Below, in pieces: positions 91 through 40,479 of a stretch of 64,000 nt of DNA (the stretch's first letter is position 1; each line of letters starts with the position of its first letter). The DNA comes from Selaginella moellendorffii. Its lineage: Eukaryota; Plantae; Lycopodiophyta. A program made the position numbers and the translations under genes. Under the pieces are notes generated by a model that ran no database searches, was not told the DNA's origin, and saw only the letters and a list, made by a program, of their open reading frames with translations. Where the stretch lies: positions 2,128,408 through 2,192,407 of the forward strand of contig NW_003314278.1 of NCBI RefSeq assembly GCF_000143415.4, read 5' to 3'.

Positions 91-118
91 TTTAGGGTTT
101 AGGGTTTAGGGTTTAGGG
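91..118 (+). repeat. (TTTAGGG)4 plant telomere-type repeat inside the transposon intergenic region
   Basis: Four exact TTTAGGG units; degenerate equivalent at ~24706-24731 in copy B. Confidence 0.85.
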
Positions 119-3805: not shown

Positions 3806-3970
3806 ACTCGCGCTCGCACACTCGCGCTCGCATCGCGCTCCCACTCGCGCTCGCATCGCGCTCCCACTCGCGCTCGCATCGCGCTCCCACTCGCGCTCCC
3901 ACTTCTCTACAGGTTTCTCGTGTGCATCGGCGTCCACTCGCGCTCGCATCGCGCTCGTGTGCATCGGCGT
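3806..3970 (+). repeat. GC-rich ~23-bp tandem repeat (CACTCGCGCTCGCATCGCGCTCC), copy-number variable between element copies
   Basis: Two more units here than at ~1024-1140; diverged version at ~25634-25765. Confidence 0.8.
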
Positions 3971-4418
3971 CCACTTCAAGACACACCCAGTTTGTAACTT
4001 CGCCGCCAACTCCGCCGCCCACTCCGCCACCCACACGCAGCCCACTTGGCGTCCCGGGAGATTTCAGCGCCACTCTCCAACTGTAAGTGGCAGAGTAGCC
4101 TTGCTGCTACGATCCGCTGCACACACAGTGCACATTCGCCAGCGAGTCCGGTTGTCACGCCTCCATTCGGCTTCAAATGGTAAGTCTTTTAGGCCAAGTA
4201 AAAAATGGCATGAGGCCACATGCCATTCAGTAGCAACATTGGCATGCACCGATTGGGCTCTCGAGTGCAGTCCGGTTACAGATGGCGTGTAGCCTCACGC
4301 CATCTTAGGATGCAGCCTCAAGACATCTGATGCAGTGGTGAATGGCGTGTGGCCTCACGTTATTTCCAGCTACTAGCTTTTCATCTGTCAGCTCTAATTG
4401 TTGTGCATTTCTGAACAG

Positions 4419-9840: not shown

Positions 9841-10258
9841 GATGGCATGTATTTATTTAAAAATGTAACTTATTATGGCATGGTGTTCCATGCAATTGTA
9901 TTAATATTAAAAGACAATTCTTTGAGAGGATTTGCATTATACTAGAAGTGTTACAGCATGTTATTGGAAGTCTACGAAGTTGTTTTATTAATAATGGGAA
10001 AGTAAAGATTGAATGGGGACTTGGGCTCCACCTAGACTCGGAGCAACTGAGCCAATATTAAAAGGATGGAAAGAAATTGGACGACGATGACAAGGAGAAG
10101 AGAGAGGTGAAGCAGTGGCAGGGGGAGGAGAAGTGATTGAGTAGACATTTCCTTGTTTAAAATAAAATGGCATGTGCCTCAATGCAGTTGAATTTTGTTA
10201 TATTTATATACTATATAAAGGTTTGGAAACCTTATTTTACAAGTGGGATAATGACAAT

Positions 10259-10282
10259 TCCCACTTTAACGAAATAGAGCTT
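10259..10282 (+). repeat. Right terminal inverted repeat of transposon copy A'
   Basis: TCCCACTTTAACGAAATAGAGCTT, identical to 39506-39529. Confidence 0.9.
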
Positions 10283-10289
10283 TTAAGTA

Positions 10290-19170: not shown

Positions 19171-20277
19171 AATGATGCTCTTGCAAGGTTTCCTGTTACT
19201 AACAATGGCACTATTGGCTTTGAGAATGGGGACGTTTACAGAAGGGGTTATAGACTCTAGAGAGAGGATCTCTTTCGGAGCTACAGCAGGGGCTAGAGTG
19301 GGAGTCCCAATGATCGGCAGAGTCGTGGATGAAGTCGGTCTCCTAAGCTCACGGGCGATTCCTTGACAGCTATGGAGTCGCCAACGATGGTGGCTAGGCG
19401 AGATCATTCGATCGATCAGGGACGCAAACACAGCAGCTCATTTCTTTTGAGAACCAACGGAGCGCACCAAAAGTTTGATTTTGAACCCTAAAAGCTCAAT
19501 CAACGGCTCAGATTTAGGTTCGCTTAACATATATGTATGTTTTTAGGGTTCTAGCCACAAGCTTTATTTCGTTAAAGTGGGATTTATTCAGTAAAATGGG
19601 ATTAGGTACAAATTTTCAAGTATTTGAAAATGACGTGAAATTATATATTTTTTGTCCAGGGGCTAGACATATCTGGGACATGGTGACTAGCGCAGTGACT
19701 TTATGTCCAGACTAAGTCCATCTGGTTGTATAATAAATCTCATTGTCAAGGTGAACAAGCCGAATCTGAAGCTAAAGAAGAGCGATGGCATGCGCGCACA
19801 CACTATTTGTTTGCTCATTGAGCGTGTGGTGAGCTTTCCAAGATGAACGTCATTCCTATTAGCCAAACATATAACTTAATGATGAGAACATTTAGATATT
19901 ATTCAATGTTATCTTTTTCTAACGAATCTAATTGTGAAGGTGTAGCAAGAGGCATTGCTAGTCTGGAGAAGTCATTTAACTCATTTGACCCTTAGTGTAT
20001 TTTCATGAAACTAAATAACATTCATATTATTAAGGAATTTCTCTAGTACCTTTTTTTTACGACATAGAGGCTTGCATTTCTTTCAAAGGTGATTTAGTAA
20101 AAGGCCTGAGGGCACATGCCATTCTATTTCTCAGACCGGTATTAAGATATACTAGTGCAAAGGGAAAAAGGTATTTGGTGATCAAGTAAATGGCATGAGG
20201 GCACACGCCATTATAAGCCTAAGCGCTAGTGGACACCTCCTTTTTGGTGTCACGCCTCACGCCATCACGCCATGCCA

Positions 20278-23200
20278 TCACGCCTCCTCTGATTCAGATT
20301 CGGATTGTTCACCTTGAAATAAAATACATTAAAAACTTAGTAAAGGAATATTAATGAATCTCACCTTGAACCCGGGTTATGAATGCTCTTGCTGCATCTC
20401 TTGCATGGTCTGGCAAGGTGATGGTGGCACTCTGCTTCCGCATCCAACCATGCACAACATTATCCACCGATATGCTCATGCTGGGATCCCTTGGATTCAG
20501 CACCTATCTCTTTTCTAGGCAATCCTTCGTATATCCGGAACTTGGCTTGAACCACTCCACAGTTACATTGAAGGAGTTAGTTTCCGCGTCCTCCTCTGCA
20601 TCAGTGATGCAGCGCCCCACCCATATCATTTGTTTTTTATTACTGGGTCTGACAAGCACGACCATTCCTTTGCAGACCTGTACTAGATTGAATGCTGAAT
20701 CCGGCTTCTTGTTCCTCGGCCCATAATAGTGATCCTCAACATCGTTATCTGTCACTGCATTTCCAGAGGACATTGTTCCGCTACTATCTGGTGCTCTAGG
20801 TTCTGGCCAAAAGGACTCTTCCAATTCTTCATATACAACCGGCCCATTTTGGATAGCAGATATAATCTTCTCCCAGTATTCGAGCAAAAGCTTGCACCTC
20901 TTAAAATAGGATTCTCCACCAAACACCAACCCCCTCTTCCAGAAGGCAATATGCTGTCTAATCCCGGCCACTATACTTTCCTGGTCTTTGAGTCTATCCG
21001 GGTGCATCGGCCGTGAGGAATCCTGAGGAATCATAGGTTCCCCAGTTATGGGATCTCTCTTGAAGAGTTCAATGCCATCCACTGGCAGCCACAGTGTGTC
21101 CCATTCTCTCATCTTGTACCTCATCACTAGAGCACCGTCACGCATGCTGAAATGAAACTGAAGAGGCTTGGAGTGGCCAATCAGCATTTTGGATCCGTCC
21201 CTGATGTAGCCTCTTACAAACCCCTTAAAGTCTTGAACCTCTGTCACAAGTGCAGCTTCAACAGTGCCTTTGATGCAATTTTGGAATTCATCGTAGAGTT
21301 GTGGGAGGGTGAGGACATTGGATCGCCGGAGGGACTCTGCCAGGTGACTGAACATGGCATCAACGCCTTCATGAGTGTGCCCAACCATAAGAAAGCCAAG
21401 TGTAACCGTTTCAAATATGCCTTTGGCAACAAGCATCGCCAAGTACGCGAAGACGTACATGTTTTTGTTCTCACTGCCAGCATTGTCTGTTTGGAGCAGA
21501 AGATGGGGTGGAAGGCCACATCGGCCGCAAGAACTTCCTTGAGATTTTGCTTCGTTTGGATGAGGCTGTGCATTCACCGGGCGACCAGCCTCATCGGAAT
21601 GGCATGAGGCCTCACGTGATAACCCTACAATCTGACGGCCAACATATTCACTGGGATGGCATGGGGCCCCACGCAATACTGCAAGCCTTTGCTCCTCCTC
21701 CAGCTGAACCCTGTATGGGGTTCGATCGACAAGGGCCTTATGCAAGGGTTGGCCGTTCAGCTCAGTCTGCGCACTTTGCAGAGACCTTAAGTGTTTTGCT
21801 AGGGACGCAATCATCATGTTTGCACCCCCACCACCCCATAGAGGTACAAAGAAGTTCCCATAGTTCTGGGCACCATGCCCATGAGCGATTATGCCAAACA
21901 GAGACACAGGCAGCTGCATGGATGAAGAGATTGCCTTGGGGGCAGGATTGAGTTGAGGTAAGCACGTCTTTTTCTGGTCCATTTTGTCGTGGATGATGCA
22001 GAGGTAAGAGTTAGGTCTCTCCATGGAGAGAATTCTGTTATGATAATATGCAGTCCTGCAGCTTCTCTGCTCGATGTTGTGGTCGAGCCGCCTTCTAACC
22101 AACGTCTCTCACTCTTGAGCGCTGCAAGAATTCTTCGACAAAGCCATTTTGATAGCAGTGCACTCGTCACACTTTGAAAAGCTGGAGTACTTTCCTATAC
22201 TCACATCCCTGAACCTGTTGCTCCACAATCTACTAAATCTAGATTGGCTCAGCTTCCTGTAGCCATTACTCTGGAGTTCCCAATTCACATCTTCCAATAT
22301 GGCCCCCTTGGTATACATGGAAGGGAGAACTCGTTGGGTGTCTCGTGTTCCATCTTCCAAGAGGCGGGTTTTATGTGGTTGCTGCTCGCTACATGTCTCG
22401 ACAAACCTCTTGAAGATTGCCTCTCCATATACAACATGACCCTTAGTTTTGTGTGTACCGTCGTTCCCATGGACTGCCTGTTGAACCCTTTGTTCTTCGA
22501 ACTCAGTTTTGATTCTGTAGAATGTGCTTTGAGAGACTCCATAAATGATTCTCCATGCCTTCATGCAGACCAAACCCCTCTGGAAGACCATGCCCCCCAC
22601 CTGATGTTCTGAAGCATCAACAGATGACCGTAATGCCTCATACACAAAATTGCGAGCTGCCTTCTAGGACAATGTCTTGTATCTTGCTCTCTCCTCTTCA
22701 ATAGCATCTCAATCAGCATGTTGACAGCACCTCCTCTTGCAACAAGCAACTGTCGAGACCATTCGAACCTCCATCGCCATTTTCTGCCTTTTCGGTTCGT
22801 TGCTCAGATCCCTTTGGCTGCGCTGTAGGAAGGTATACTTTCTTTTCCCATGAAGAGATGTTCTGTCATCAGTTGTAGTGGTGTTTGATTGTGAATCCTT
22901 CACATTCTCAAACACTAAATGCCTCAATTTCCACCGCACAATGCTTCCAATAGTCAGACTGTTTTCTTCTGTGTCAACAACCTTTAAAATCGCAACTCCA
23001 ATATTATCCCAGCCCAATTCTTGATTAGCAACCGCATCTCTTGGATCGACAACTGTGGCTAAGCCCTCAGCTACCACCTCCCCCTCGGGGTTGTTTAGAA
23101 ACACCTTTTCCTGAATCCATGTAGCACGGTTCTTAAGATCCACGGAGGGAACATGCGTCGCACTTGCGCTGTCCCCAACATTTGCTTTCTTCTGCAGATT

Positions 23201-23419
23201 TTTCAAGGCAACAACAACATTTACCCCGACGACCATCTCTCCTCGTTCAATAGCGACCACATTCCCATCGAAGACAGTCTCTACTGATACAGCAGCATTG
23301 CCTTCCCCAAGCCTTTGACAGTGTATAACAAAGTTCCGATCCATAGACACAAGGGTCCCTTTTGCAACTCTCTTCCCACCATTCAAAATCTAAACCTTTT
23401 CCCCAACCCTGAAGGCCAT
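20278..23419 (-). pseudogene. Transposase (~1000 aa) with five in-frame nonsense codons: two N-terminal Tnp1/En/Spm-like repeats, Cys-rich region, RNase H-fold DDE/D core, C-terminal SH3/Tudor-like beta domain
   Basis: ORFs 23386-22709, 22645-22109 and 22102-20504 are all in one frame from ATG 23419. Motifs: IIHDKMDQ, LQTDNAGSENKN, FLMVGHTHEGVDAMF. Terminal intron 20364-20313, then GEQSESESEEA*. Confidence 0.85.
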
Positions 23420-26400
23420 TCTGAAAGTGCAGAAAAGAAGTTAAGACCATACAAAAAATGATTGGAGAATGGCATAAATCATAACATACCAAATAGCATG
23501 AGGCCACATACCATTATTCAAACATGCTATTGACACCCACGTGAAATTTCGCATTCACAAAATTGGCATGAGGCCTCATGCCATCTTGATATACACACAG
23601 CTGCAGGCAAGTAAAAACATACATGACAATACGCTAGCCATGAAATTGCAAGGGCCCAAGATGGCATGTGGCCTCATGCCATTTCTAAATGTGGTCGTAA
23701 GCCATTCCATGGTGAACATACCAGGAAGCACAAGTGCCGAATATCAAGAGGAAGCGGTAGCCACACCAAAGACAGTGCCGCTCGCAACACCGCAACTACT
23801 CGTAGCGCCGCTCGCAACACCACAACTGCTCGTAGCGCCGCTCGCACAAACTGCCACTCGCATAAACTGCTGCTCGCAATGGCACTCGCAATGCCGCAAC
23901 CGCTTGTAGACGCATAAACCATAGCTCACAACGCCGCTTACACAAGCAATGCTCACTGCGCTCAGCGGAACCAAGAACACGGCGCACAAAAATGATAGAC
24001 CTAGGAATGAGTTCGAGAATTCAAAAATAACACACGCTTGAACGTCACATCAAATCCTTTGACAAACCAGATCTTATGATTCCTCTGACAAATTTCAAAC
24101 TGAGTAGCTTCTAGACTTTGCTGTCGGAGGTTGAACTTTGTCACATCATGTCCTTGCCTCGATCCAGCTGTGCCATGTCAGTGATTCGAACTTTGCCATG
24201 CTGTGCCAGCGATCCTCGCCAAGATTATTTGCCGTGTAAAGGAATAATTATGCTGTGTGTGTACGTCCATTTATGGCAATATAAGGCCACACACCATTCA
24301 AAGAATAATGCTAGTCGAGCATTTTTTGGTGCATTTTTGGGTTCAAAATTGCATGAGCCCACACGCTATAAAGTTTACCTATACCAAAAATAGAAACAAC
24401 TTTATTTACTTGGGAATTTAAGTGGTTGAGGCATTTTTAAACTTACAAACACATGCCCTACTTACATTCCTTTGGTTGCTTAAAATTCAAAAATATTATA
24501 AACCTTTCTTTTTGCATTTTCAATGTTTTCAATTATGGTTTTTGATTTTCGCAGGACCAGTCTAGTAATCTATTTGCATCCTGTCATGTTTATAGCTAGC
24601 TTTCATTTGTCCTCTTCGCTAGCCTAAGATACATCTGCTCGGCATCTGCCTCTTACAGCATTTGCCCAAAAAGGGCATCTTTCTTCACGCAGCATTTGCC
24701 ACATGTTTAGGGTTTAGGTTTTAGGGTCTAGCAATTCAGTAGCTTGATAAACATGCAAATACAGAACTTTATGCAAAATCCTTTGATATGTCACAATGCC
24801 CCTAGGACTATAAACACATTTCAATAGAGAGGGTCCTTTCATTTTATAACTCCTTACGTAGATCTTGGTGAAACCAGAGTTAGTGAAGTTGGTTTCTTGT
24901 GATTCCGCATCTGATTGTGATGTCCCTTTGTAGTGTCGATAGAAAGGTCAATGCACACCAAACTGTAGAATCTTGGAGCAAAATAACAGTCGGATCTATG
25001 GCAAATGCCCCTGAAACATTGTAAGGCTTGTGTGGTCTTATGTGGTATTCGATTGAGATGCTTCTTTGCAGGGTCATCAAGAAGGACATTGTATACCATT
25101 CTGTAAAATCTAGTTGCGATCTAACGGTTGGATCTCCAGAAAACTCAAAACAATCTCGCGCATGTCAGAATATTCTAGGAATATACTCCTATGTGCCCCT
25201 GAAAATGGCATGCGGCCCCACGCCATTCAAAAGATAACGCCAGATGACACCGAGCATTTTTTGGTGCATTTTTTGGGATCAAAATTGCATGAGCCCACAC
25301 GCTTGAATGTCATATCAAATCCTCTGACAATATATTTAGCTGAACATCTGGCATTTTTGGAAATACAAGATGCTTTGGAATATCCAATCATGCATGGTAT
25401 AAATATAGCAAGGGTATTAAATGATATCCCAATCATGATCTTTCTTTTGGATTTCGCGTGCATGCAGTCTGAGGAATGATGACGTTGCGGATTTCTTTTG
25501 GATTTCACGTGCATGCGCGCGGCGATCCAGAAATTAATGGTGGCACCCAAGTCCGAGGAATGATGACGTGGCGGGATTACCAACCGTCGTGACATTTCGC
25601 GCGTGTGAGGTTAGGTTTTGCATTTTGCTTCGTACTCGCGCTCGCATCACGCTCCCACTCGCGATCACGCTCACATTCGCGCTCATCTACCTTCTCTACA
25701 GGTTTCTCGTGTGCATCGGCGTCCACTCGCGCTTGCATCACACTCGCGCTCGCATCGCGCTCGTGTGCATCGGCGTCCACTTCAAGACACACCCAGTTTG
25801 TAACTTCGCCGCCAACTCCGCCGCCCACTCCGCCACCCACACGCAGCCCACTTGGCGTCCCGGGAGATTTCAGCGCCACTCTCCAACTGTAAGTGGCAAA
25901 GTAGCCTTGCTGCTACGATCCGCTGCACACACAGTGCACATTCGCCAGCGAGTCCGGTTGTCACGCCTCCATTCAGCTTCAAATGGTAAGTCTTTTAGGC
26001 CAAATAGAAAATGGCATGAGGCCACATGCCATTCAGTAGCAACATTGGCATGCACCGATTGGGCTCTCGAGTGCAGTCGGGTTACAGATGGCGTGTAGCC
26101 TCACGCCATCTTAGGATGCAGCCTCAAGACATCTGATGCAGTGGTGAATGGTGTGTGGCCTCACGTTATTTCCAGTTGCTAGCTTTTCATCTGTCAGCTC
26201 TAATTGTTGTGCATTTCTGAATAGGCGAGGAATTGCGTTCTTCTTCCAGCCACTGTCAATGTGGATGCAAAGAAGGGGGAGGAGTTCACCAGTTGGACTT
26301 TCGGGATGGAAGGCGAGGATCTGAGGCTGTACAACACAGATGGTGGGAGAAAAGAATGCATGGGGATCCTCATCCAAGTGACAGACACTCCATGCAGTTC

Positions 26401-26964
26401 CATGCAAGAATATGGACTGGCACTTGTGGTAAAGACAGCGTCTGCCTTCAAGATCCACCTTGCACATCCTAGTGGCTTCCCAGAGGGGGGCAGTGGCTAT
26501 GAGGAATTCCTAGAGGGAGCTAGGGAGAGGTTGTCCAGGAGGCCCACAATTTCAAAGACGCTGCGGGTCTATGAAGATCACATGGAATCCACGGACCTCA
26601 CCTACGGCGATGTTCAAAAACTATATTCCAACATTGAGCCGTTGAGAGTGCCTCCAGTTCGCGAAGCGAAGGGGAAGGGGGTCGATCTGGAAACTACCCC
26701 AAAGCAGAAAAGGGTGGTCAAGCTCAAGCCGACTGTGAGACACAAAATCCCTAGGCCCCAAAGTGGAGCCGGAAGGGCGCCACATGGTAGTGGCCGAAGC
26801 GAGAGCCAAACGAGCGTAACACGTTTGGACCAGAAGCTCCGACTTGAAAAGTCAAGAGCGGGAGTGGAACTCCCAACGAAGTGCTCGAGGAACGAGCACG
26901 AAGCGAGCAAAAGGCAAGGCTCCAAAAAGGGACCCAAAAGGACCAACACATGAGACGTGGGAGT

Positions 26965-27348
26965 GTCCGAGATGGACTCGAGTTAGAGTCCGAAGTGGAG
27001 TCCGAGATGGACTCGAGTTGGAGTCCGAAGTGGAGTCCGAGATGGACCCGAGTTGGAGTCCGAAGTGGAGTCCGAGGTGGACCCGAGATGGACCCGAGTT
27101 GGAGTCCGAAGTGGAGTCCGAGATGGACCCGAGATGGAGTCCGAGATGGAGTCCGAGATGGAGTCCGAAGTCGAGACCGAGACCGGGACCGAAACCGGGA
27201 CCGAGACCGAGACCGAGACCGAGATCGGGACCGAGACCGAGATCGGGACCGAGACCGAGACCGAGGCCGAGGCCGAGACCAAGCCCGAGCCCGAGTCCGA
27301 GTTCGAGTCCGAATCCGAGTCCGAGTCCGAGTCCGAGTCCGAGTCCGG
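26965..27348 (+). repeat. Compound minisatellite in the 5' LTR (GAGATGGAGTCC-type 11-mers, GAGACC/GAGTCC hexamers)
   Basis: Direct inspection; source of spurious low-complexity ORFs. Confidence 0.85.
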
Positions 27349-30300: not shown

Positions 30301-32676
30301 TCTAAAATATGGAATTGTCCATGTTAGACTATATGGCAACTATAAACCTTGCGAAAGGGGAGGCCTTAGCAAGCTGAGGGACAGAGTTCCTTCAAAGTTC
30401 CCAAAGACGATTCTAGGTAGCGTAGTACCTAGAAAGGCCAAGTGTAAATGGTTCATGGAACGCGCGAAATCAGAGTGGCGCAGCAGAAGTGTGGTCTTGA
30501 AGCTTGCCATAAGGCAAGGTTATCAAGGTTAGGGAAGTAGTTCCCGAGTGTTCAAAGAGAGGGCTTTGAACGAAAGTTGATGGTCAAGGACTTTCACGCT
30601 TATGCAGGAACCATGTTACAATGGTCGGAGGACTTGCCAAGTGAGATTGGCACGTCGGGGGAACAAAGACCCTAGTTGAAGGTGATATCTTCAAAAAGGG
30701 TGGGCCAGGGGGCCGAGCATGGAGGAGTCCATGCATGATCATAGACATGTCAAGTGAGAGGACTTGGCAGTGTGGAGGAACTAGGTTCCTAAGCTGTGAT
30801 CTGTAGCGCGCTTTAAAAATAGGTTGGTGCACCGGCGTGGGGAGTCACGCCAGGCATCTAGTGTGATGTCGTCCGTAGATGCATATACGGAGGTTGGGTT
30901 TGAGTCCCGACCCTCTAGTGCTTGGGTTCGAGTCCCAAATCACTAGGGCGTGGTGATGGTTTGGAATATGAGGACACTCATATTTCGGTGGTCATGGACT
31001 CTCAGTGGGGAGACTGGTTTGGGCACACCGCCAAGCGAGGGATGCCTCGGAGTCGTGATGCACGGTTAGATTGCTTAGTGTGAAAGCTCAGCATATCTAA
31101 CTTGAACACTTTGGTGCAAGTGGCACCAAGGTCGTGGTGAGTGAGATGGGGACACCTAATCTTAGTTGCTATGAACCCTTGGCCGTAAGGGCTAGCTTGG
31201 GTGCACCGCCAAGTGTGGGGGATGCCCCCGGGGTTATAGTCAACAACTTGGAGGTCTAGAAAACCAAGTACCTCTTGGCAACTCTGTTAAGGTGCCAAGG
31301 TGAGATCACTAGGTGATCTTATGGCCAGAAAAGGACAAGGTCCTTGGTTGGCTAAGGAATGAAGTTCCTGGTTCAAAATGTTGAAATTGAACTGTTTAAG
31401 GTGGTGTGGCTTGGTCGTGATAACCAAGTGGAAAGAGCACCTAAGGGAAATAAACTATGTCCGTGCGATGGCATAGTGAGTCCGAGGAAAGTAGTCTCTA
31501 TAAAAGACCCATGGGAGGGTCACGAAGTTGGGCCGTGGATAGAGCCCATAGCAGAAGATGCTAAAGAGACGTACTAGGGGTGAACATCCTCCGGACTTGG
31601 CAAAGAAGAGTCTTTGCTATGGAACCAAAACAATACCTCAAGGAGGGAGGTAGAGATTCGATGATGCTTGGTGCAACAATCAACGGATAGGAGCAAAAGA
31701 TGAGTGGCCAAGATAGGGCCGTGGAATCCCTTGGAAGGAATCCAAGTGACAAAGTTAGGCGAGGAACACTAATGTGTTGGACGCTAACAAGTTGCGGGAA
31801 AGGAAGTGTGTTTCCAAGGAGGGATTCCGAATTGCTCCGATTTGGCGAAAGTGGAAGCTCCAAAGGAGGGAGCGGTAAGGTAGCCAAATGATAGGGCGAT
31901 GAACAGCCCTAGCACAAAGTATGATAACTGGAACTTTGACACGAAATAGGAGAGAGGATGATAGTGCCCTCGAGTAGAGAACTTCCTAGGATGGGAAGTG
32001 GAGTTGCACAAAAGGTGCAAGGCAAGGTGTCGGAGACACCTAGGAAATTGACTCCAAGAAGTCAAAATTCAAAGTTCCAAAGTGCAAAGGTTATATCGAT
32101 AGAAATTGAAACTACTCGAGAAGGAGTAGTGGGATTGACTTAGAGAAGGGTCTCTAAGAGGTTTAGCGAGAACTAAACCAATAAAAGGAGAGAACCACTC
32201 CATGTGGTCCAATCAGTCTCTAAGTTGGGGAGACTACCCTCCTTAGAGGATATGCAAGGCATGGTGAGCATTTGGTGTCAAACCATTGAGGCATATGCAA
32301 AAGGCATGGTGAGCCTTCAATGTCAAACCATTGACAAATATTGGCTAAGTGCCAAGGATGGAAATGGTAACACATACGAGTGTTACTTTACAAAATGGTT
32401 TACCGTTCGATGAGGACATCGAACTTCGTCTATGGGTGGTGGAGTTGTGAGACACAAAATCCCTAGGCCCCAAAGTGGAGCCGGAAGGGCACCACATGGT
32501 AGTGGCCGAAGCGAGAGCCAAACGAGCGTAACACGTTTGGACCAGAAGCTCCGACTTGAAAAGTCAAGAGCGGGAGTGGAACTCCCAACGAAGTGCTCGA
32601 GGAACGAGCACGAAGCGAGCAAAAGGCAAGGCTCCAAAAAGAGACCCAAAAGGACCAACACATGAGACGTGGGAGT

Positions 32677-33223
32677 GTCCGAGATGGACTCGAGTTAGAG
32701 TCCGAAGTGGAGTCCGAGATGGACTCGAGTTGGAGTCCGAAGTGGAGTCCGAGATGGACCCGAGTTGGAGTCCGAAGTGGAGTCCGAGGTGGACCCGAGA
32801 TGGACCCGAGTTGGAGTCCGAAGTGGAGTCCGAGATGGAGTCCGAGATGGAGTCCGAGATGGAGTCCGAGGTGGACCCGAGATGGACCCGAGTTGGAGTC
32901 CGAAGTGGAGTCCGAGATGGACCCGAGATGGAGTCCGAGATGGAGTCCGAGATGGAGTCCGAGGTGGACCCGAGATGGACCCGAGTTGGAGTCCGAGATG
33001 GACCCGAGATGGAGTCCGAGATGGAGTCCAAGATGGAGTCCGAAGTCGAGACCGAGACCGGGACCGAAACCGGGACCGAGACCGAGACCGAGACCGAGAT
33101 CGGGACCGAGACCGAGATCGGGACCGAGACCGAGACCGAGGCCGAGGCCGAGACCAAGCCCGAGCCCGAGTCCGAGTTCGAGTCCGAATCCGAGTCCGAG
33201 TCCGAGTCCGAGTCCGAGTCCGG
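32677..33223 (+). repeat. Compound minisatellite in the 3' LTR, expanded relative to the 5' LTR
   Basis: Same units; the 3' LTR is 1781 bp versus 1618 bp for the 5' LTR. Confidence 0.85.
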
Positions 33224-36200
33224 AGCCTGAGAGGGTGAAAGCCCAAAGCGTTCGTCTCCCAGACCCTGGGGGGTTTGGTGAGCCCCAAAAGTATAGTAGG
33301 GGGAGGACTGCAGTGAAGCCAGTTTGGCCAGGAAAGGCCAGTTTGGCCCAGGAAGGCCAGACCCAGTTTTGGGTGATGAGCTGCCCACTGGGAAGTCCAA
33401 GACTAGAGTGAACACAGACCGACAAGCGGGGTAGCTTGGTGAAGTGTTCAAGAGCCGGCTCTAGTTCCCCCGGGAGATCGACTGGCCGATGCTCCCAGTC
33501 CAAGTGTGGGTGGCACTACCTACTTGGATACCAGGTGTGGCTCAACGAAACCTCGCTCTAAGCCCATGGCTAGAGCACCTAAAGGCGAAAGGCGGGGAGA
33601 GTACCTAGGTGGCTCGCGTAAGGCCACGGTGTTCCGAAATGTTGTCCCAAAGGCCCAGACTGTGGAAAGGAAGAGGAGCAGTCCTCTGGGGTAGTGACCA
33701 AGGACACAGTCGTGTGGTGAGGAAGTCCCAGAGGACCGTGGGACTTAGTGGTCGGGCCTGTGGGTCTCGGTCCAGTGGCAGTGTTGGCAAACACGGCCAG
33801 GGGCAGAAAGGGACTTAGTGGGGACTGACAGAGCGATATTGGGGAAGGCTATTCCCCTTGTCGGTGGGCATCCTAAGGATGCTAAGGAGTGGATCTGAGA
33901 TGACCACTCACGGATGGTTTGCCTAGTCTTGGGGAGCCAAGACTGTGATGCAAGGGGTATTGGACTACCAGTGTGGCAAAGGTGAATGGGCATGGCCTTA
34001 GCGTAACGGGCCGAGATGTCAGTGGTACCTTTGGGTGTCGGTCATGGGATCGGACACGTGGAGCACTTGGACCAAGTGCAAAGGTTGAGTGGCATGGATG
34101 CCATTCTCGGGGCTAGCAAGCCCCAAGTCTTAAATGGGACTTATGGAGGTTGTGAATGAGACTCCTCCAAGTGGTCGGAGGTGTGGTTAAGTGACTAAAG
34201 TAAAATGGAAAAATTAGTCGCTTACACTGACGTCCGACTCTCCTACTCCAAAAAAGAAGCTACTCGGTGATGCCATTGCCTCGGGTTCGAACACTACACC
34301 CACCAAAAAGAAGAGCCGCAAAGAGCAGAAAGAGCAAGAAGAGGCAGCAAAAATTGTCGCAGATAATAGTACTTGTTACTATTCCAATAAAGTATATACA
34401 ATCGACGTGAGCCGTATCGACATCCAAAGCAAATACAACCACAGGCTAGTATCTGATGAGTGGGTGGAGAAACTGAAGCAGAAGATGCTGGCAAGTCCAG
34501 TAACACCCGACATCGCAGACGTGATCCCCTACTACCGAACAATGAAGGGCAAGACGAGGTATCCAGACTTGATTAATAGGAAGGTGTTGGACGATCAGAA
34601 CATCCGGTTCTATGCCGTCTCCGGGCAGCATTCTAGCTTGGCGATGCAAGAGATAGTTGTGGATATTATGGTGGGCGAGGAGGTGAAGAAAGTCTTCAAG
34701 ACAAGAGTTGTCCACCTGGTAAAAGGCAACTTGCCCCTCCGATCTATCATATACATCTCCCACGCGCAGAATGTCAAGCAAGAAACGTGCTACAAATCGG
34801 GTCTGCATTGGCATTGGCACGAACACGGAAGCTCTGGGTTCAACTGAAGAAGCCACAAAAACCAAGACAATGACGTGCACTAGCAACTAGCGCCTCGCAG
34901 GTAAGCCTCGTTGCATGTGGCATAGCATGTGGCCTCACGCCATTTCCATTGCAGGAATTCTCGAGTCTTCTCTCGAAAACACTGGGGGTCAATGACACAC
35001 TCAGCATCCATAACATTCTACTCGCGACAAAAGTTGTTTTTGACAAATAGGTAGATGTGCTGAGGAGGTACCATGACGGGGAGTTACTAAACTCAATGGG
35101 TGTGGAGGACGGCCGGAAGCCCAATGATTTGAAGCTCAACGCCTTGCGTTTCTCGCGGTCTCTAGACAACGACGACCTTTTGACAGTGGCTAATGCTCTT
35201 CTACGTAGTGAGGTAGTCTTCAATAAGACCAAAATGACTCCCGGCTATATTGTGACATACGAGGACTTGTGCACGACTCTGAGAGCTCGTGCGCTATTGA
35301 AAGATTGGATCTTTGAGCAAGTGGCCGTGGAGAGGGTGAGCATCGACACCACGCAAGAGATGATGGAAGCGCTGGATTTGTCAAATGAAGACATCGACGA
35401 GTACGTGAAGGGGGCCCCCAAGTTCATCGATCTGCTGCGGGATGCCACGAAAAGTAAAGCTGAGAATTTGGATCAGTATCCAAATTTCATTAAGAGTGAT
35501 GTCAACCGCCGACTTCAGAAACAGCTCGACCCCACAGCAGAGGCCTATCGAGAACCTTACCGGGTATACTTGAATTTGGATGAGGATCAAAGGTGGAGGA
35601 GTATCATTTCCCGCGGAGATGAGCAGGTCAAGAACATCTTTTGTGTGATGGACTTCACAAACGAGGAGATCACTCATGCAGACGAAGTCAGCTCCATCAT
35701 TGACTTAATGGTGGGACTTGCGGAGGTGGAATCTTCAGTCCACTATATAATCTACGACTCCGAATCCTATCACAAGTTCTCGAAGGCCTTGAACGAGGTG
35801 AACGCTCGGTTGAAAGGCAAGGAGATGCGGGAGATCTATGGGATAATGGCTAAGAAGAAGATACCGACGAATGTTCGCATCTTCACACTCGCCTTTGTTA
35901 TTGGTCCTGCAGCAGAGTGGGTCTGGAGTGACTTCCCAGCTTCGTTCGACAAGGCCGATCGAATTGATCTAAGGGAGGTCAATTTACCCGTGCCTGAGGA
36001 ACTGAAGACGGCTATGGAGCTTTCGAATCCAAAGAAAGCTCCAAGTGCAGCATGGGAAATGCTCAGCTGGGTCTTCAACGCAATAGCGGGTGGGTCATCT
36101 GCTTCCGACTCCAAGGGCAAATGCACTGTCGAGTACAACTGCGGCGGACTATTCTTTCGAGCCGCACTACTCAAGGGTGTCCCGTGTGTTGCGGTGACAA

Positions 36201-39200
36201 ACTCCATTGAAGAGGTGACTTCAATGGAGCATATAATTACAGTTGCCAAAGAAAAATAGTATCTTCTCTGCGAACCTGGTGAGTACGCACTTTAAGTTTA
36301 AATGTTATCTCACAAGCTCTGTATGCAGGAGCGTGGCCACCCCCAGATGCTGAAACGGCGTTAACAGCTACTGTTGAAGATACCCATGTTGGGCCGAGCT
36401 CACAACCTGCACAAGGTAAGGTCACGTGAGGCCTCACGCCATTTTGATTATAGATTGTTATGAATATTCAGACACAAGGACTGAAAAGCGCACTGGTGGC
36501 GCGTCGAAGAAGGACAAACAGACAAGCAATAGGAAAAAAGGAGGTACAAATTATATTTGCAATGGCGTGTGGTCTCATGCCATTCCTTACAGGAGACACT
36601 TCTTCAAAGGCAAAACAGGCAAGCACCAGCCAAGCTCAAACTGACAGTGGTCATAAAAAGTGAAAGCACGTTGGACAGTCGTCGGGATCAGAGGCGTTTG
36701 ATTCGAAAAGGAAGAAGGGCAACGAAAAGATGATAGGTAATGCCTCGCGGTTATGGCGTGTGTGCTCATGCCATTCATTGCAGATCAAGGGCTGAGTGAA
36801 AGCAGGCAGTCACCACCTCCTGACTCAGATTCCTATGGTGGACTCCCCTTCCCCAATCTCAATGGAGAGGTACAATGGATGAGGGATGCTTTTCAAGTCA
36901 GGGCCATGTTTTTCTCATCTCGTCGTCTTCGAAGGGTGCAAGAACGTGCAGAAACCATGTTAAGACAGTTGGGTGAGGATACGGTCCTAGGTCACGCACT
37001 AAAACAGGCTATGGATGTCTTGTATTTTGAGATAGAGACTCGGCCAGATGATTTTCCCAAGATGGTCCTGGAAGAACAAGCCATCCAACCTAAGCAGCCT
37101 ATGGAAGAAATGCAGGAGGGGGATGAGGAGCTAGAGAAAGATAATGAGCAGGAAGAGCAGAAGGATGAAGAGGAGGACAAAGAAGACGAGGACGAAGAGG
37201 ACTTGGATGGTCCTCACAATGGTGACGATCACAATAACGACGACGACGATGATGACGACGATGGCCAGCCTGAGGTGGCCAAAGAGCAGCGAAGGAAGGT
37301 CATACAAGACAAACCATCAGGTAAATAATAGTACATCCATTCCTAACCTTTTACCATTTCTAACATTGTCCATGTAGGTCGCAGAGCAAATGGTAAGTAG
37401 AGATTATTCAATTGAATTTACAAACTCTAGCCTTTAGTGTCGAGGAAGGATAGTGCCAAGCAAGGGTCGAAACGTATGTCCAATCCTTCAGAATCAGCAG
37501 TGCACCCAAGTGATATCAGTCCTAGTTCCTCAATAGCAGTTGATGGTAAATACAGTATAGTCGATTCAATGTGCTAATGAGTTTGTTTTTAGTAGCACGG
37601 GAGGATACCATCTCAATCGAAGGGAGATATTTGGACATGCATATGGATCTGCCAGTGGACTCTACTTGCCTGCAAGAGTCATCAGAGCTGGTGGAGGCTA
37701 CTATCCATATCAACGCCAAGCAAGCTGACCATGCTCCACTTGATGCTGCCCATACCACTGAGTCAATCTTGTCCACGTATCCAACTGACGGTGACCAGGC
37801 GCCATTGGACCCGCATGAGGCCGCCCCAGCTGCCGAGCCAGTCGTATCCTCATTTCCAACGGACTCAATGTGTGCCCAATCGTCTGACTACGCGCCGTTG
37901 GAACCTCCCTACACCGCCCCTGCTGCCTGTTCGGTCATGTCCACTTTGCCAACGGAGGCACCAGCTGAAATGGCGTGTGATCACACGCCATCGGAACCAC
38001 CCCATGCCATTGTTGAGCCAGTTGTACCAGAGTCTACAACTGAAATGGCATGTGCCCACACGCCATCGGATGCAATTGACCCCACATTGCAGAGGAGAGT
38101 ATTTCCGCCCTTCACGTTTCCTCAACCAAAACCCTCTCAACGACCATCGGGAGCACCATTCGCTAATATTGTAGATGGTAAAATTGACTTGTACCATTTT
38201 TTATGCTGACGCATTTCATTCCAGAGTCATGGCAAAGGTACTGTATCGTTTTTGATCTGAATGGTGTCCTTTTCTCCCATGAGCGTGGCTCGTCCTCGAA
38301 TGTCACTACACCCTCCAAAGCCTGCGGTCGCAAGTTGGTCAAAAGAGACAGATTCACATTAATCACACGGGAAAAACTGTGGGATCTAATAATGACCATG
38401 CGACACTTAAAACAAAGGGCCGGGTTCAATTTGCAATTGGGAGTTTGGACATCCATGATGCGCCACAATGCATTAACGTTGCTACAGATGATGCACGATC
38501 AGACGCGAATAATATTACCATTTGACTTTCTCCTAACGCAGGAGGATTGCTTGACTATGGTCCATGTGAGGGGTAGCAAGCCCATCTTCGTCAAGCCAGA
38601 GGCTGTAGTGATGAACCGGACAGCTAGGTCAAGTGAAATCCTCATCATCGATGACTCACCGATTAAAACTGCAGCGAACACGCACACATATGCAGTGCAC
38701 CCCATCTCTTGTAGTATGGAAACTAGGGAGAAGAAACCGTATGTTCTGGGGGACCTTGCAAAACGGCTTGGAGCGATGGTGATAGAGAACCGGCCAGTCC
38801 AGGAGGTGGCTGCAGAAATCAACCAAATGGCAGATGGAACGGTATATCAGAAGCCATTTGATCGGACAGACACCAGTCATCATTTATGGCATGTATATTG
38901 TTTAGCCAAGCACTATCCGCATCTCCATAATCTGCTCAACCGAATGGGTTCTTCGACCACTGAACATGAGCGTGGACGTATTAGAGAAGAGATGGCATTA
39001 CTATTGGGTTTAAATCCTGATAGTGTGGAGAGTGATGAAATTCCAAGATTATTGTATAGGCATTGGAGGCAAAAAATAACAGTCTGAGATTGCATGTATT
39101 TATTTAAAAATGTAACTTATTATGGCATGGGGTTCCATGCCATTGTATTAATATTAAAAGACAATTCTTTGAGAGGATTTGCATTATACTAGAAGTGTTA

Positions 39201-40479
39201 CAGCATGTTATTGGAAGTCTACAAAGTTGTTTTATTAATAAGGGGAAAGTAAAGATTGAATGGGGACTTGGGCTCCATCTAGACTCGGAGCAACTGAGCC
39301 AATATTAAAAGGATGGAAAGAAATTGGACGATGATGACAAGGAGAAGAGAGAGGTGAAGCAGTGGCAGGGGGAGGAGAAGTGATTGAGTAGACATTTCCT
39401 TGTTTAAAATAAAATTGCATGTGCCTCAATGCAGTTGAATTTTGTTATATTTATATACTATATAAAGGTTTGGAAACCTTATTTTACAAGTGGGATAATG
39501 ACAATTCCCACTTTAACGAAATAGAGCTTCCACCAAGGTAGGGATATGGTGTCCAAGAAAGTGAGAGTGTGGCTGATCCTGCAAGGATCCACCTCCCCAA
39601 ATTTTGAGGTGTTAAGTGAGTGCTCCAGTATCAGTTTGAAATTTCTTTGAAAGCTTCTTCTCATTTGCGAATCTTGACACCACAAATAGTGATGCGGAGC
39701 TCGCAATCCCCACTGACTCGCCCATGTGGCTGGCCAGTTGGAAGGGTTCTCATACAGGCTCATGAGGGCAGTCGGTGGGGTTTGGGAACTCTGCATGACT
39801 GCTCATGGGATCAAGATTTGTGTCATGGTGTTAGGAAGCTGTCAATCTGAGCCAGAGTTCCTTCGGCGTCTTCGTGTTCTCCATGAGCAAGTGACGCAGA
39901 AAGTAGCAGCCTTCATGGCCAACTTCCCAGTGTCTACTGTTGAGTGTGATATGTGCTACCTTTCTCAAGACTGAGGGAAGAGATCAATCGTTTTTGTAAT
40001 AGAAACTTGTTTTTGTAAAGCACATCCTAGTAGCGTGATATAGATTCACAAGCAAGATTAGCAGCCTGGCAGTGGGGCTTTCGCTCTTGGTAACTTTCTT
40101 TTCTCGACTCCTTTGGATGACAAGCAGATGAAGATCACACGTCCAGGGAATGTTTTGTATCTGCTATAAATGAGATCTGTCCGGCCGATCATGTGAGTGT
40201 TTTTTTGAGTTCTTTTCTTATGAACGACCAACGCCAATGTTTCCAGCAAAATATCGCTGCGATAGAGAAGGAAAATATTTTCAGGAGAAGTTTTACAACT
40301 TTGAAAAGCTCGAATCACACGACAAAAATGCAGGTGAATCTATCTTCTTGTTCTCGATCAATGCATTTTACTGGCTTTCTAGTTCTCGAATGATTCGTGC
40401 TGTGTTTGGACAGGCAAATGAAGATCACATGTCCGGGAAATGTTTTCTATCAGAAGATGTTCGAAAGGAAAAGGGAGTT

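What the first reader, a model, noticed from the sequence alone, without database searches (positions are those of the whole stretch)
19559..39529. Large plant DNA transposon carrying a ParB / pseudo-methyltransferase / CTD-phosphatase gene plus dispersed palindromes: candidate self-targeting anti-silencing system
Seen: a bounded element (24-bp TIRs, CCAC TSD) with two divergent genes, a DDE/D transposase and a ~1600+-aa accessory gene, plus ~20 copies of one 22-bp palindrome; further copies lie at 1-10282. Established: bacterial ParB loads on palindromic parS sites; ParB-MTase fusions occur in phages and mobile DNA; FCP1/SCP phosphatases act on the Pol II CTD; Arabidopsis VANDAL transposons encode VANC proteins that bind short motifs dispersed through their own element to undo silencing. 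Inference: this element encodes an analogous but unrelated protein-plus-site system for self-recognition, chromatin or transcription control, or transpososome assembly. I do not recognise this architecture from described plant transposon families.
Basis: partly seen in the sequence, partly recalled or inferred. Interest (0 to 1): 0.93.

Follow-up and report, generated by a model that had tools for sequence, protein, structure and literature searches.

The report
Sola1 plant transposon with palindrome-linked accessory gene
This is a defective copy of a Sola1-type cut-and-paste transposon in a land-plant genome; besides its transposase it carries a large, conserved gene built from apparently inactivated enzyme domains and about twenty copies of its own 22-base palindrome, a design also found in a liverwort and not described in the literature I could search.

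Summary
There are 24-bp TIRs at 19559 and 39529 flanked by CCAC, two divergent genes, and a 22-bp palindrome (33 copies in the window, all inside the two element copies, 0 expected).

- 26734-34226 is a nested 7.5-kb non-autonomous LTR retrotransposon that splits an exon of the accessory gene, so the DNA element is about 12.5 kb.
- The transposase frame has three in-frame stops.
- The transposase (Pfam DUF7869) has the DDD motifs of Sola1. With the 4-bp TSD, this places the element in a known superfamily already reported from moss.

Domain calls:
- The FCP1/SCP (NIF) domain is confirmed, but DxDxT reads DLNGV.
- The N4/N6 methyltransferase-like domain is supported through liverwort homologues (hhalign 94.8%, E 5e-8). 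Its catalytic and SAM motifs are degenerate.
- ParB is not confirmed.

Riccia sorocarpa elements have the same design (transposase, divergent MTase-like/NIF gene) but a different palindrome, with 51 copies in one locus. A terminal 17-mer is shared between Riccia and the window. The accessory gene is under purifying selection (omega about 0.45).

The most likely function is that the accessory protein recognises its own element through the palindromes. Binding and anti-silencing are inferred, not shown. Verdict: a new variant of a known kind.

The parts
19555..19558 (.). left target-site duplication CCAC
   Evidence: read directly; same 4 bases at 39530-39533
19559..19582 (+). left terminal inverted repeat AAGCTTTATTTCGTTAAAGTGGGA
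   Evidence: 23/24 complementary to the right end
19585..19601 (+). subterminal 17-mer TATTCAGTAAAATGGGA, a near-repeat of the TIR core; identical to the terminus of the Riccia element (L001 14274-14290)
20507..23389 (-). Sola1-like DDD transposase (Pfam DUF7869). One frame of 961 codons with three in-frame stops (22709-11, 22664-6, 22109-11). D1 IHDKMDQ 21974-21994, D2 DNAGSENKN 21461-21487, D3 GHTHEGVD 21359-21382
23390..26224 (.). region between the divergent genes, holding nine palindrome copies and simple CG-rich repeats; presumed promoters and 5' UTRs
26225..26733 (+). accessory gene, first visible part of the long exon; it continues at 34232 and is cut by the LTR element
   Evidence: the frame is continuous across the empty site of copy 2
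26734..34226 (+). nested non-autonomous LTR retrotransposon, not part of the system. LTRs 26734-28351 and 32446-34226, PBS TGGTATCGGAGC at 28355, purine-rich tract before 32446, TSD CCGAC/CTGAC
   Evidence: no long ORF, and the two ORFs tested had no Pfam hit
34232..34844 (+). accessory gene exon continued: basic linker, then the conserved N-terminal domain (VYTIDVSRID at 34392-34421, SGQHSS at 34620-34637). ParB/DGQHR-like by motif only
   Evidence: hhalign against the Riccia family: 96.2%, E 2e-9
34901..34953 (+). short GT..AG intron candidate containing a palindrome
   Evidence: read directly
35051..36256 (+). accessory gene exon with the degenerate beta-class N4/N6 methyltransferase-like region. 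Motif X-like NPKKAP at 36026-36043, motif I-like NCGGLFF at 36137-36157. No DPPY; the candidate site is VSIDTTQ at 35336-35356
36784..37325 (+). accessory gene exon with an acidic low-complexity linker
37550..38206 (+). open frame rich in P, T and E (a linker exon, or partly intron); holds two palindromes
38188..39084 (+). accessory gene last exon: NIF (FCP1/SCP-type HAD phosphatase-like) domain. The catalytic motif reads FDLNGVL at 38251-38271 (DxN instead of DxD)
   Evidence: (PF03031, E 2.6e-5, 24.4 bits against a cut-off of 21.8)
19785..19806 (.). palindrome copy (left subterminal, degenerate)
20101..20122 (.). palindrome copy
20190..20211 (.). palindrome copy
21599..21620 (.). palindrome copy inside the variable linker of the transposase
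21656..21677 (.). palindrome copy inside the variable linker of the transposase
23493..23514 (.). palindrome copy
23563..23584 (.). palindrome copy
23661..23682 (.). palindrome copy (exact match to the pattern)
24348..24369 (.). palindrome copy
25205..25226 (.). palindrome copy (exact)
26011..26032 (.). palindrome copy (exact)
26088..26109 (.). palindrome copy
26148..26169 (.). palindrome copy
34922..34943 (.). palindrome copy in the short intron candidate
36421..36442 (.). palindrome copy (between exons)
36562..36583 (.). palindrome copy (between exons, followed by a ..TTACAG acceptor-like site)
36753..36774 (.). palindrome copy (followed by a ..TTGCAG acceptor-like site)
37970..37991 (.). 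palindrome copy
38045..38066 (.). palindrome copy
39122..39143 (.). palindrome copy (right subterminal, after the stop of the accessory gene)
39506..39529 (-). right terminal inverted repeat
39530..39533 (.). right target-site duplication CCAC
1..10282 (+). second, partial copy of the same element (right part, from the intergenic region to the right TIR). It lacks the LTR insertion, has two assembly gaps and an assembly-type internal duplication, and holds 14 palindrome copies

Best explanation
Shown. 19559-39529 is a decayed copy of a Sola1-group (DDD, 4-bp TSD) DNA transposon of a land plant. It is about 12.5 kb once the nested 7.5-kb LTR retrotransposon is removed. It carries two divergent genes.
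- The transposase is a pseudogene here.
- The accessory gene encodes roughly 1500 aa. In order, it has a conserved N-terminal 'GQHSS' domain, a degenerate beta-class N4/N6 DNA-methyltransferase-like domain, acidic and P/T-rich linkers, and a C-terminal FCP1/SCP (NIF) phosphatase-like domain.
- The MTase-like domain lacks DPPY and FxGxG, and the NIF domain has DxN instead of DxD, so these are probably binding modules rather than enzymes.
- About 20 copies of one 22-bp palindrome lie in the non-coding parts: subterminal regions, the region between the genes, and introns. A few lie in protein linkers. The ancestral form is ATGGCGTGnGGCCnCACGCCAT.
- Riccia sorocarpa elements share this three-part design but use a different palindrome. 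The terminal transposase-site motif is the same in both.

Inferred. The accessory protein, probably as a dimer, reads the element-specific palindromes through its methyltransferase-derived and/or N-terminal domain, and so marks copies of its own family. The phosphatase-like domain then engages a phosphoprotein, most plausibly the RNA polymerase II CTD, or the transpososome. The effect would favour expression or mobility of the element.
For: Anatomy.

Sola1 membership:
- The invariant D / DNxxxxNKN / GHTHxxxD motifs match the Sola1-1_AP core FDLEK..TPQ / YSDNCGGQNRN / GHTQS in the Majorek 2014 supplement.
- Sola is defined by a DDD transposase and a 4-bp TSD and is present in moss (PMC10741241; PMC9033089).

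The accessory gene belongs to the family:
- Riccia locus L001 has a DUF7869 gene divergent from an 805-aa gene and a NIF gene.
- L005 has the same accessory gene.
- There are 19 Riccia paralogues, and P0051 holds the MTase-like and NIF domains in one protein.
- The window N-terminal domain against the Riccia profile gives hhalign 96.2%, E 2e-9.

MTase-like domain:
- 11 of 18 Riccia members hit PF01555 weakly.
- The Riccia profile hits M.RsrI at E 8e-4.
- hhalign against three bacterial N6_N4 MTases gives 94.8%, E 5e-8.
- The window exon matches the Riccia profile at the same motif, E 0.002.

NIF domain.

Selection: omega 0.45 between the window copies (36 synonymous, 57 non-synonymous, p 2e-4) and 0.14-0.73 between Riccia subfamilies.

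Palindromes:
- 33 in the window against 0 expected, all within the elements.
- 51 in L001 against 0 expected, none in its flank.
- They are present in all three Riccia loci, and absent from the two DUF7869 loci where no accessory gene was seen.
- Only 2 differences in the 11 palindromes shared by the two window copies (242 bases), against 3-4% divergence overall.

The terminal 17-mer is conserved while the palindromes differ. This argues that the transposase reads the ends and something else reads the palindromes.
Against: - No binding or expression data exist.
- The window MTase-like exon has no significant match of its own to bacterial MTases. Its match to the Riccia profile is weak (probability 13%), so that domain call is transitive.
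- The exhaustive phmmer search found no relatives.
- Structure models were poor (pLDDT 34 and 51) and the fold search gave nothing.
- The co-occurrence of palindromes and accessory gene rests on few, related loci.
- The exon-intron structure is inferred from open frames only.
- Both genes are broken in this copy.
- Two palindromes lie inside the transposase frame and two inside an accessory-gene frame, so they are not strictly non-coding.
Confidence: 0.5

Rival explanations
1. The palindromes are binding sites for the transposase itself, serving as internal or subterminal enhancers of synapsis like the subterminal motifs of En/Spm or Ac. The accessory protein acts elsewhere.
For: Many DNA transposons carry repeated transposase-binding motifs. 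Three palindromes lie in the left subterminal region and one in the right. The N-terminal DNA-binding part of the transposase is uncharacterised.
Against: The palindromes are spread over the whole 12.5 kb rather than concentrated at the ends. The terminal motif TATTCAGTAAAATRGGA is identical in the window and in Riccia while the palindromes are unrelated in sequence. The two DUF7869 loci where no accessory gene was seen have no such palindromes.
Confidence: 0.2
2. The palindromes are cis-elements for host factors, or structure-forming sequences (promoter or enhancer sites, splicing signals, hairpins that feed or evade small-RNA pathways), and are independent of the accessory protein.
For: Nine copies lie between the divergent genes where the promoters should be. 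Four lie just upstream of acceptor-like sites in the accessory gene. Each half carries a CpG that decays to TpG/CpA, which fits methylation of these sites.
Against: Host-factor sites would not be expected to be replaced by an unrelated palindrome in another lineage while the gene design is kept. There is no Rfam match. The stems are only about 10 bp.
Confidence: 0.17
3. One reading: a ParB-type protein loads on parS-like palindromes and spreads, giving a VANC-like anti-silencing system.
For: There is a motif resemblance of VYTIDVSRI...RFYAVSGQHSS to the ParB/DGQHR N-terminal domain. From my own knowledge, N6_N4 MTases are often fused to ParB domains in phages and plasmids. VANC proteins bind dispersed motifs in their own element (PMC5735166).
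Against: There is no HMM, profile, structural or BLAST support for ParB. The arginine of GxxR/DGQHR is replaced in both lineages. No HTH was detected. No methylation or expression data exist.
Confidence: 0.1
4. The accessory gene is a captured host gene fragment without function for the element.
For: Plant DNA transposons often capture host fragments (general knowledge). The domains look enzymatically dead.
Against: The same multi-domain gene in the same divergent position occurs in the window plant and in a liverwort whose transposase is only 27% identical. Omega is below 1. No host homologue was found.
Confidence: 0.03

Closest known systems
Sola1 group of the Sola superfamily of DNA transposons (Bao et al. 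2009; reported from the moss Physcomitrella)
   Same: DDD transposase with the Sola1-type motifs, a 4-bp TSD, short TIRs, and occurrence in a non-seed plant.
   Different: Published descriptions that I could read mention only the transposase. One survey gives a mean Sola1 length of 5.4 kb in bivalves. This element adds a roughly 1500-aa accessory gene and a dispersed palindrome. Repbase entries could not be checked.
VANDAL21/VANC21 of Arabidopsis (Mutator superfamily; PMC5735166)
   Same: A transposon-encoded accessory protein alongside short element-specific motifs spread through non-coding parts, with the motifs differing between subfamilies.
   Different: A different superfamily and an unrelated protein. 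The motifs here are 22-bp palindromes, not 9-bp direct motifs. The anti-silencing effect is untested here.
En/Spm (CACTA) TNPA with its subterminal 12-bp motifs
   Same: A second element-encoded protein is proposed to bind repeated motifs within the element (my own knowledge).
   Different: The motifs here are not confined to the subterminal regions, and the protein is unrelated.
Bacterial and phage beta-class N4/N6 DNA methyltransferases (PF01555, e.g. M.RsrI), including ParB-MTase fusions
   Same: The motif X-I-II region is homologous.
   Different: The catalytic DPPY and the FxGxG SAM loop are lost. The protein is eukaryotic, transposon-borne and fused to a NIF domain. The ParB part is unconfirmed.
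Inactive methyltransferase domain of DIRS1 retrotransposons (Iyer et al. 2016, PMC4738411)
   Same: A mobile element carries a catalytically dead MTase domain thought to act as a binding module, possibly linked to RNA polymerase II.
   Different: A different MTase clade (PCIF1-like, group 2), and a retrotransposon polyprotein rather than a separate gene of a DNA transposon.
FCP1/SCP-family CTD phosphatases, and inactive relatives such as Tim50 (my own knowledge)
   Same: The NIF fold scores above the Pfam cut-off.
   Different: The second catalytic Asp is replaced: N in the window, E in Riccia. The context is a transposon.

Membership tests
Sola superfamily, Sola1 group | DDD catalytic triad in an RNase H-like core with Sola1-type motifs | tested here: met
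   D (IHDKMDQ), DNAGSENKN and GHTHEGVD are invariant or near-invariant in 16 homologues. Sola1-1_AP has FDLEKVLTTPQ, YSDNCGGQNRN and GHTQS. This is a motif-level comparison only.
Sola superfamily, Sola1 group | 4-bp target-site duplication | tested here: met
   CCAC on both sides. The definition is from PMC10741241. Only one complete insertion was available.
Sola superfamily, Sola1 group | terminal inverted repeats | tested here: met
   24 bp, 23/24 complementary.
Sola superfamily, Sola1 group | significant full-length similarity to reference Sola1 transposases (Repbase/Dfam) | not testable with these tools
   No Repbase or Dfam library is available. Pfam has only DUF7869 for this family.
Pfam DUF7869 | score above the gathering cut-off | tested here: met
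   144.9 bits against 26, E 2.9e-42.
ParB/Srx N-terminal domain (ParBc, DGQHR, DUF262) | profile match to any ParB-superfamily model | tested here: not met
   No hit in Pfam or NCBIfam for the window or Riccia proteins. The PDB profile search found no ParB. hhalign against P1 ParB gave nothing.
ParB/Srx N-terminal domain (ParBc, DGQHR, DUF262) | GxxR / DGQHR nucleotide-binding motif with its arginine | tested here: not met
   The window has SGQHSS and Riccia has (S/C)GQHSS. Both the Asp and the Arg are replaced.
ParB/Srx N-terminal domain (ParBc, DGQHR, DUF262) | ParB/Srx fold | tested here: inconclusive
   The AlphaFold models had pLDDT 34 and 51. Foldseek against the PDB gave no match with E < 0.03.
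ParB/Srx N-terminal domain (ParBc, DGQHR, DUF262) | adjacent HTH that binds a parS palindrome | not tested
   No HTH family was reported by Pfam. No dedicated test was run.
beta-class N4/N6 DNA methyltransferase (PF01555) | homology of the motif X-I-II region | tested here: met
   Riccia family profile against three bacterial MTases: hhalign 94.8%, E 5e-8. M.RsrI at E 8e-4. The window exon is linked only through the Riccia profile (E 0.002) and by collinearity.
beta-class N4/N6 DNA methyltransferase (PF01555) | Pfam gathering score | tested here: not met
   Best score 21.7 bits against 26.7. The window exon has no hit.
beta-class N4/N6 DNA methyltransferase (PF01555) | catalytic (D/S)PP(Y/F) motif IV | tested here: not met
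   The candidate sites read VSIDTTQ (window) and VFLD(V/L)THP (Riccia).
beta-class N4/N6 DNA methyltransferase (PF01555) | SAM-binding FxGxG motif I | tested here: not met
   The window has YNCGGLF and Riccia has FFSGGVF, with one residue missing relative to FAGSGVT of M.RsrI.
FCP1/SCP (NIF, PF03031) phosphatases | Pfam gathering score | tested here: met
   Window: 24.4 bits against 21.8. Riccia P0051: 22.6 bits.
FCP1/SCP (NIF, PF03031) phosphatases | DxDx(T/V) catalytic motif | tested here: not met
   The window has DLNGV at 38251-38271. Riccia P0051 has DVEGL.
VANC-type sequence-specific anti-silencing system | accessory protein binds motifs in its own element and removes DNA methylation | not testable with these tools
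   This needs DAP-seq or ChIP and methylome data. Only the arrangement (accessory gene plus dispersed lineage-specific motif) is seen.
VANC-type sequence-specific anti-silencing system | Mutator-superfamily element with a VANC homologue | tested here: not met
   The transposase is DUF7869/Sola1-like and no MULE domain was reported.
LTR retrotransposon (the nested insert) | direct LTRs with TG..CA, PBS, purine tract, 5-bp TSD | tested here: met
LTR retrotransposon (the nested insert) | gag-pol coding capacity | tested here: not met
   The longest open frame is 118 aa, and the two ORFs tested had no Pfam hit. The insert is non-autonomous.

The most novel reading that the evidence does not exclude
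Sola1 elements of early-diverging land plants carry an old self-recognition module. It would be a DNA reader built from a dead methyltransferase (plus a GQHSS domain), fused to a dead CTD-phosphatase-like domain, and it would co-evolve with its own CpG-bearing palindromes scattered through the element. Its role would be to counter host silencing or steer RNA polymerase II on its own copies. That would be an independent invention of the VANC principle, made from pseudo-enzymes.
Probability: 0.25. Interest if true: 0.85.

Novelty: new variant of a known kind. Interest (0 to 1): 0.65.

Why it matters
Very few transposon accessory proteins have a known role. In plants, VANC is the only clear case of a sequence-specific protein with which an element recognises itself.

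This case pairs a multi-domain protein made of apparently inactivated DNA-methyltransferase and CTD-phosphatase folds with element-specific palindromes. The pairing is conserved between a liverwort and the window's plant, whose transposases are only about 27% identical, and the sites differ between them.

That gives a directly testable protein-site pair: EMSA or DAP-seq, then methylome and expression assays in a transformable bryophyte. It also gives a first functional handle on the little-studied Sola superfamily, and an example of how bacterial-type DNA-modification domains are reused as readers.

If the protein does not bind the sites, the result is still a useful annotation: DUF7869 corresponds to the Sola1 transposase, and several Riccia 'hypothetical proteins' are transposon genes.

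Tried and rejected
- Word-index search with the 402-aa exon alone found nothing. The length window excludes full-length relatives, so the search was wasted.
- Exhaustive phmmer of the same exon against 1.84 billion representatives gave only a spurious thrombospondin-repeat protein.
- The palindrome was not found by the short-range inverted-repeat search. It was found as a direct-repeat family instead.
- tblastn of the window exons against the Riccia loci gave nothing significant. Homology needed profiles.
- AlphaFold of the N-terminal domain with 4 sequences gave pLDDT 34. AlphaFold of Riccia P0045 with 24 sequences gave pLDDT 51. Foldseek against the PDB gave only noise.
- ParB tests were all negative: Pfam, NCBIfam, PDB profile, hhalign against P1 ParB, and tblastn against plasmids.
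- I looked for bacterial ParB-MTase fusions to use as comparators. The seven MTases I fetched (L006-L008, L010-L013) have no ParB part.
- GingerRoot and Ginger were considered because of a weak integrase hit and the lycophyte/bryophyte distribution. They were rejected: GingerRoot has a 6-bp TSD, 100-150-bp TIRs and an integrase-type DDE.
- CACTA/Chapaev was considered because of a weak TNP1 hit and a possible 3-4-bp TSD. It was rejected because there is no CACTA terminus and no Transposase_21 hit.
- The left ends of the Riccia elements lie outside the fetched loci, so their TSD could not be read.
- The first dN/dS run on the Riccia exons was invalid because of frame breaks in L005, and was redone per open frame.
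- Bao et al. 2009 and Yuan & Wessler 2011 are not held in the library.

Full report
**1. The observation**

AAGCTTTATTTCGTTAAAGTGGGA starts at 19559, and its reverse complement (one mismatch) ends at 39529. CCAC lies directly outside both ends.

The 22-bp palindrome is real. The pattern ATGGCRTGNGGCCNCAYGCCAT with up to three mismatches occurs 33 times in the window, against 0.00 expected from shuffles:
- 19 copies lie in 19559-39529.
- 14 copies lie in 1-10282.
- None lie elsewhere.

A self-comparison shows that 1-10282 is the right-hand part of a second copy, 94-98% identical, ending in the same TIR. That stretch has two assembly gaps and what looks like an assembly duplication.

**2.

*A nested LTR retrotransposon.* The second copy lacks 26734-34226. 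This segment has every hallmark of an LTR retrotransposon:
- direct repeats at 26734-28351 and 32446-34226, 98-99% identical;
- TG..CA ends;
- a primer-binding site TGGTATCGGAGC two bases after the 5' LTR;
- a purine tract before the 3' LTR;
- a 5-bp duplication, CCGAC/CTGAC.

Its interior has no open frame above 118 aa, and the two ORFs I tested gave no Pfam hit, so it is non-autonomous. It sits inside an exon. The reading frame ...KLKP|TSDSPTPKKK... is continuous across the empty site in copy 2. The DNA transposon proper is therefore about 12.5 kb, and in this copy its accessory gene is split.

*A broken transposase.* The transposase is one frame of 961 codons (23389->20507, - strand) with three in-frame stops. 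A 95%-identical public protein reads through them. This copy is dead in both genes.

**3. The transposase and the superfamily**

The 534-aa open piece matches Pfam DUF7869 (E 2.9e-42). It has homologues in Riccia sorocarpa, in Tribonema minus and in metagenomes. No other Pfam transposase family and no PDB chain matches, even with a profile.

The alignment of 16 homologues has invariant or near-invariant D (KMDQ), QxDNxxxxNKN and GHTHxxxD. In the window these read IHDKMDQ, DNAGSENKN and GHTHEGVD.

The supplement of Majorek et al. 2014 prints the RNase H-like cores of Sola1-3. Sola1-1_AP has FDLEKVLTTPQ, YSDNCGGQNRN and GHTQS, a clear motif-for-motif match. Sola2 and Sola3 differ more.

Sola is defined by a DDD transposase and 4-bp TSDs and is known from the moss Physcomitrella (PMC10741241; PMC9033089). 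I therefore file the element under Sola1. Two caveats apply: the comparison is at motif level, and no Repbase profile was available.

The host genes in the window are an AP2 gene, three intronless PPR genes (one with an E motif) and rpS13. They show a land-plant genome.

**4. The accessory gene**

Open frames on the + strand give, in order:
- 26225-26733 plus 34232-34844;
- 35051-36256;
- about 36784-37325;
- 37550-38206;
- 38188-39084.

*NIF domain.* The last piece matches NIF (PF03031) above the curated cut-off (24.4 bits against 21.8). The catalytic DxDx(T/V) reads DLNGV.

*No sequence relatives.* The 402-aa piece has no Pfam or PDB match. It has no relative in an exhaustive phmmer search of 1.84 billion representatives.

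*Riccia loci.* The way forward was synteny. In Riccia locus L001 the DUF7869 gene is divergent from an 805-aa gene and a NIF gene. A second locus, L005, has the same accessory gene at 56-84% identity.

*Homology of the N-terminal domain.* The window N-terminal domain aligns with the Riccia proteins at 25-28% identity, sharing VYxIxV..I, TPxIADxxP and (S/C)GQHSS. A profile of both found 19 Riccia paralogues and nothing else. One of them, P0051, has the MTase-like and NIF parts in a single protein. hhalign of the window N-terminal exon against the Riccia family gives 96.2%, E 2e-9.

*Methyltransferase-like domain.* The Riccia family supports this call in four ways:
- 11 of 18 members hit PF01555 weakly, always on its C-terminal part.
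- The family profile finds M.RsrI in the PDB (E 8e-4), aligning HPxxK...TVLDFFxGxGV.
- hhalign against three bacterial N6_N4 methyltransferases fetched from plasmids gives 94.8%, E 5e-8 over 76 columns.
- At least 13 of the 19 sub-threshold tblastn hits in plasmids fall on annotated methyltransferases.

The window exon matches the Riccia profile at the same motif only weakly (E 0.002, probability 13%). It does not match the bacterial profile on its own. For the window, the call rests on transitivity and on collinear domain order.

In both lineages DPPY is absent and FxGxG is degenerate: NCGGLFF in the window, FFSGGVF in Riccia.

*ParB.* This call has no support. Pfam, NCBIfam, the PDB profile search, hhalign against P1 ParB and tblastn were all negative. 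Two structure predictions were too poor to use (pLDDT 34 and 51), and the fold search returned noise. What remains is a pattern resemblance of ...RFYAVSGQHSSLA... to the DGQHR/GxxR strand-turn-helix of the ParB superfamily, with the Asp and Arg replaced. I leave it open.

**5. Is the gene functional for the element?**

Between the two window copies the accessory exons show 36 synonymous and 57 non-synonymous differences. This gives omega of about 0.45, with a binomial p of 2e-4 against neutrality. Between the two Riccia subfamilies, omega per exon is 0.14-0.73.

The divergent arrangement is kept between elements whose transposases are only about 27% identical. A captured, decaying host fragment is therefore unlikely.

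**6. The palindromes**

*Position.* In the window they lie as follows:
- in the subterminal regions;
- between the two genes (nine copies);
- between open frames of the accessory gene, one of them in a 53-bp GT..AG intron candidate at 34901-34953;
- twice in the poorly conserved linker between D1 and D2 of the transposase;
- twice in a P/T/E-rich frame.

*Sequence.* The flanks extend the symmetry (AAATGG...CCATTT). The R/Y positions are CpG-to-TpG/CpA variants of an ancestral ATGGCGTG..CACGCCAT. This is the signature of methylated CpG decay.

*Conservation.* The 11 palindromes shared by the two copies differ at 2 of 242 bases, against 3-4% divergence overall.

*Riccia.* All three DUF7869 loci in Riccia carry a different palindrome, C[AT]T[CG]GGGACGCGTCCC[GC]A[AT]G. 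L001 has 51 copies between 655 and 13679, against 0 expected, and none in the 8.6-kb flank. They often form 27-28-bp arrays and show the same CpG decay (GATGCGTC, GATGCATC).

*Loci without the accessory gene.* The Tribonema locus and one metagenomic DUF7869 locus, where no accessory gene was seen, have no such palindrome.

*Termini.* By contrast, the element termini are conserved. The Riccia elements end in ...TTTTACTGAATACTTAGAT. The 17-mer TATTCAGTAAAATRGGA occurs exactly at the Riccia terminus and at 19585-19601 next to the window TIR, whose core is a near-repeat of it.

Conserved ends together with lineage-specific internal palindromes suggest two separate recognition systems: the transposase for the ends, and another protein for the palindromes. 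The obvious candidate is the accessory protein. Its methyltransferase ancestry implies a fold that reads short, often palindromic, sites.

**7. Mechanism**

*Shown:* the anatomy, the conservation of the design, purifying selection, and the lineage-specific sites.

*Inferred:* the accessory protein binds the palindromes and marks its own copies. Through its phosphatase-like domain, which probably binds rather than cleaves, it would engage the Pol II CTD or another phosphoprotein to favour expression or mobility.

*Rivals:*
- The palindromes are transposase sites.
- They are host-factor or structural elements.
- The accessory gene is a captured junk gene.

I give the main reading 0.5.

**8. Known or new**

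The superfamily is known. Searches of the held literature found no paper linking Sola, or any DNA transposon, to an FCP1/NIF domain, a ParB-MTase-like gene or such palindromes. The survey of eukaryotic N6A methyltransferases by Iyer et al. lists no such clade. It does describe a dead MTase domain in DIRS1 elements, a useful parallel. Repbase could not be consulted.

I rate the finding as a new variant of a known kind, with moderate to high interest.

Noticed in passing
window 26734-34226: A young non-autonomous LTR retrotransposon (LTRs 98-99% identical, 1.6-1.8 kb). The LTRs contain long arrays of 12/35-bp and 6-bp repeats (GTCCGAGATGGA, CCGAGA) that differ in length between the two LTRs. The interior has strong GC skew and no coding capacity.
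   Followed up: partly
window 90-123: 4.9 copies of GTTTAGG, the plant telomere-type repeat TTTAGGG, inside the intergenic part of element copy 2. TRF did not report it at the matching place of copy 1.
   Followed up: no
window 16520-17533 and 18406-19180: Inverted duplication (76-81% identical) just left of the element, with a 78-bp tandem array at 17167-17448. It looks like another element with long inverted ends.
   Followed up: no
window 14248-15357 and 59498-60667; 41844-42495 and 61976-62572: Further dispersed repeats (75-88% identical) shared between the two flanks. They belong to other repeat families.
   Followed up: no
window 46110-57984: A host gene cluster: an AP2-domain gene, three intronless PPR genes (one with an E motif) and a ribosomal protein S13 gene. 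These show a land-plant genome.
   Followed up: partly
window 20507-20800 (C-terminus of the transposase): The C-terminal roughly 90 residues (..MVVLVRPSNKKQMIWVGRC..VEWFKP..) are conserved in the family. The family profile weakly matches the BAH-PHD protein SHORT LIFE (E 0.069), and one Riccia paralogue is named BAH domain-containing. This may be a chromatin-reading domain.
   Followed up: no
L001 3379-3538, 6983-7086, 9192-9954: In Riccia the palindromes often form head-to-tail arrays with a 27-28-bp period. The window element has only single, dispersed copies.
   Followed up: no
window 10283-10286: The right end of copy 2 is followed by TTAA, not CCAC. The left end is outside the window, so its TSD cannot be read.
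   Followed up: no
window 23774-23907, 25625-25852 (and 2880-3000, 3806-4046 in copy 2): CG-rich 12-30-bp tandem repeats (GCCGCTCGCAACACC..., ACTCGCGCTCCC) lie between the divergent genes, interleaved with the palindromes.
   Followed up: no
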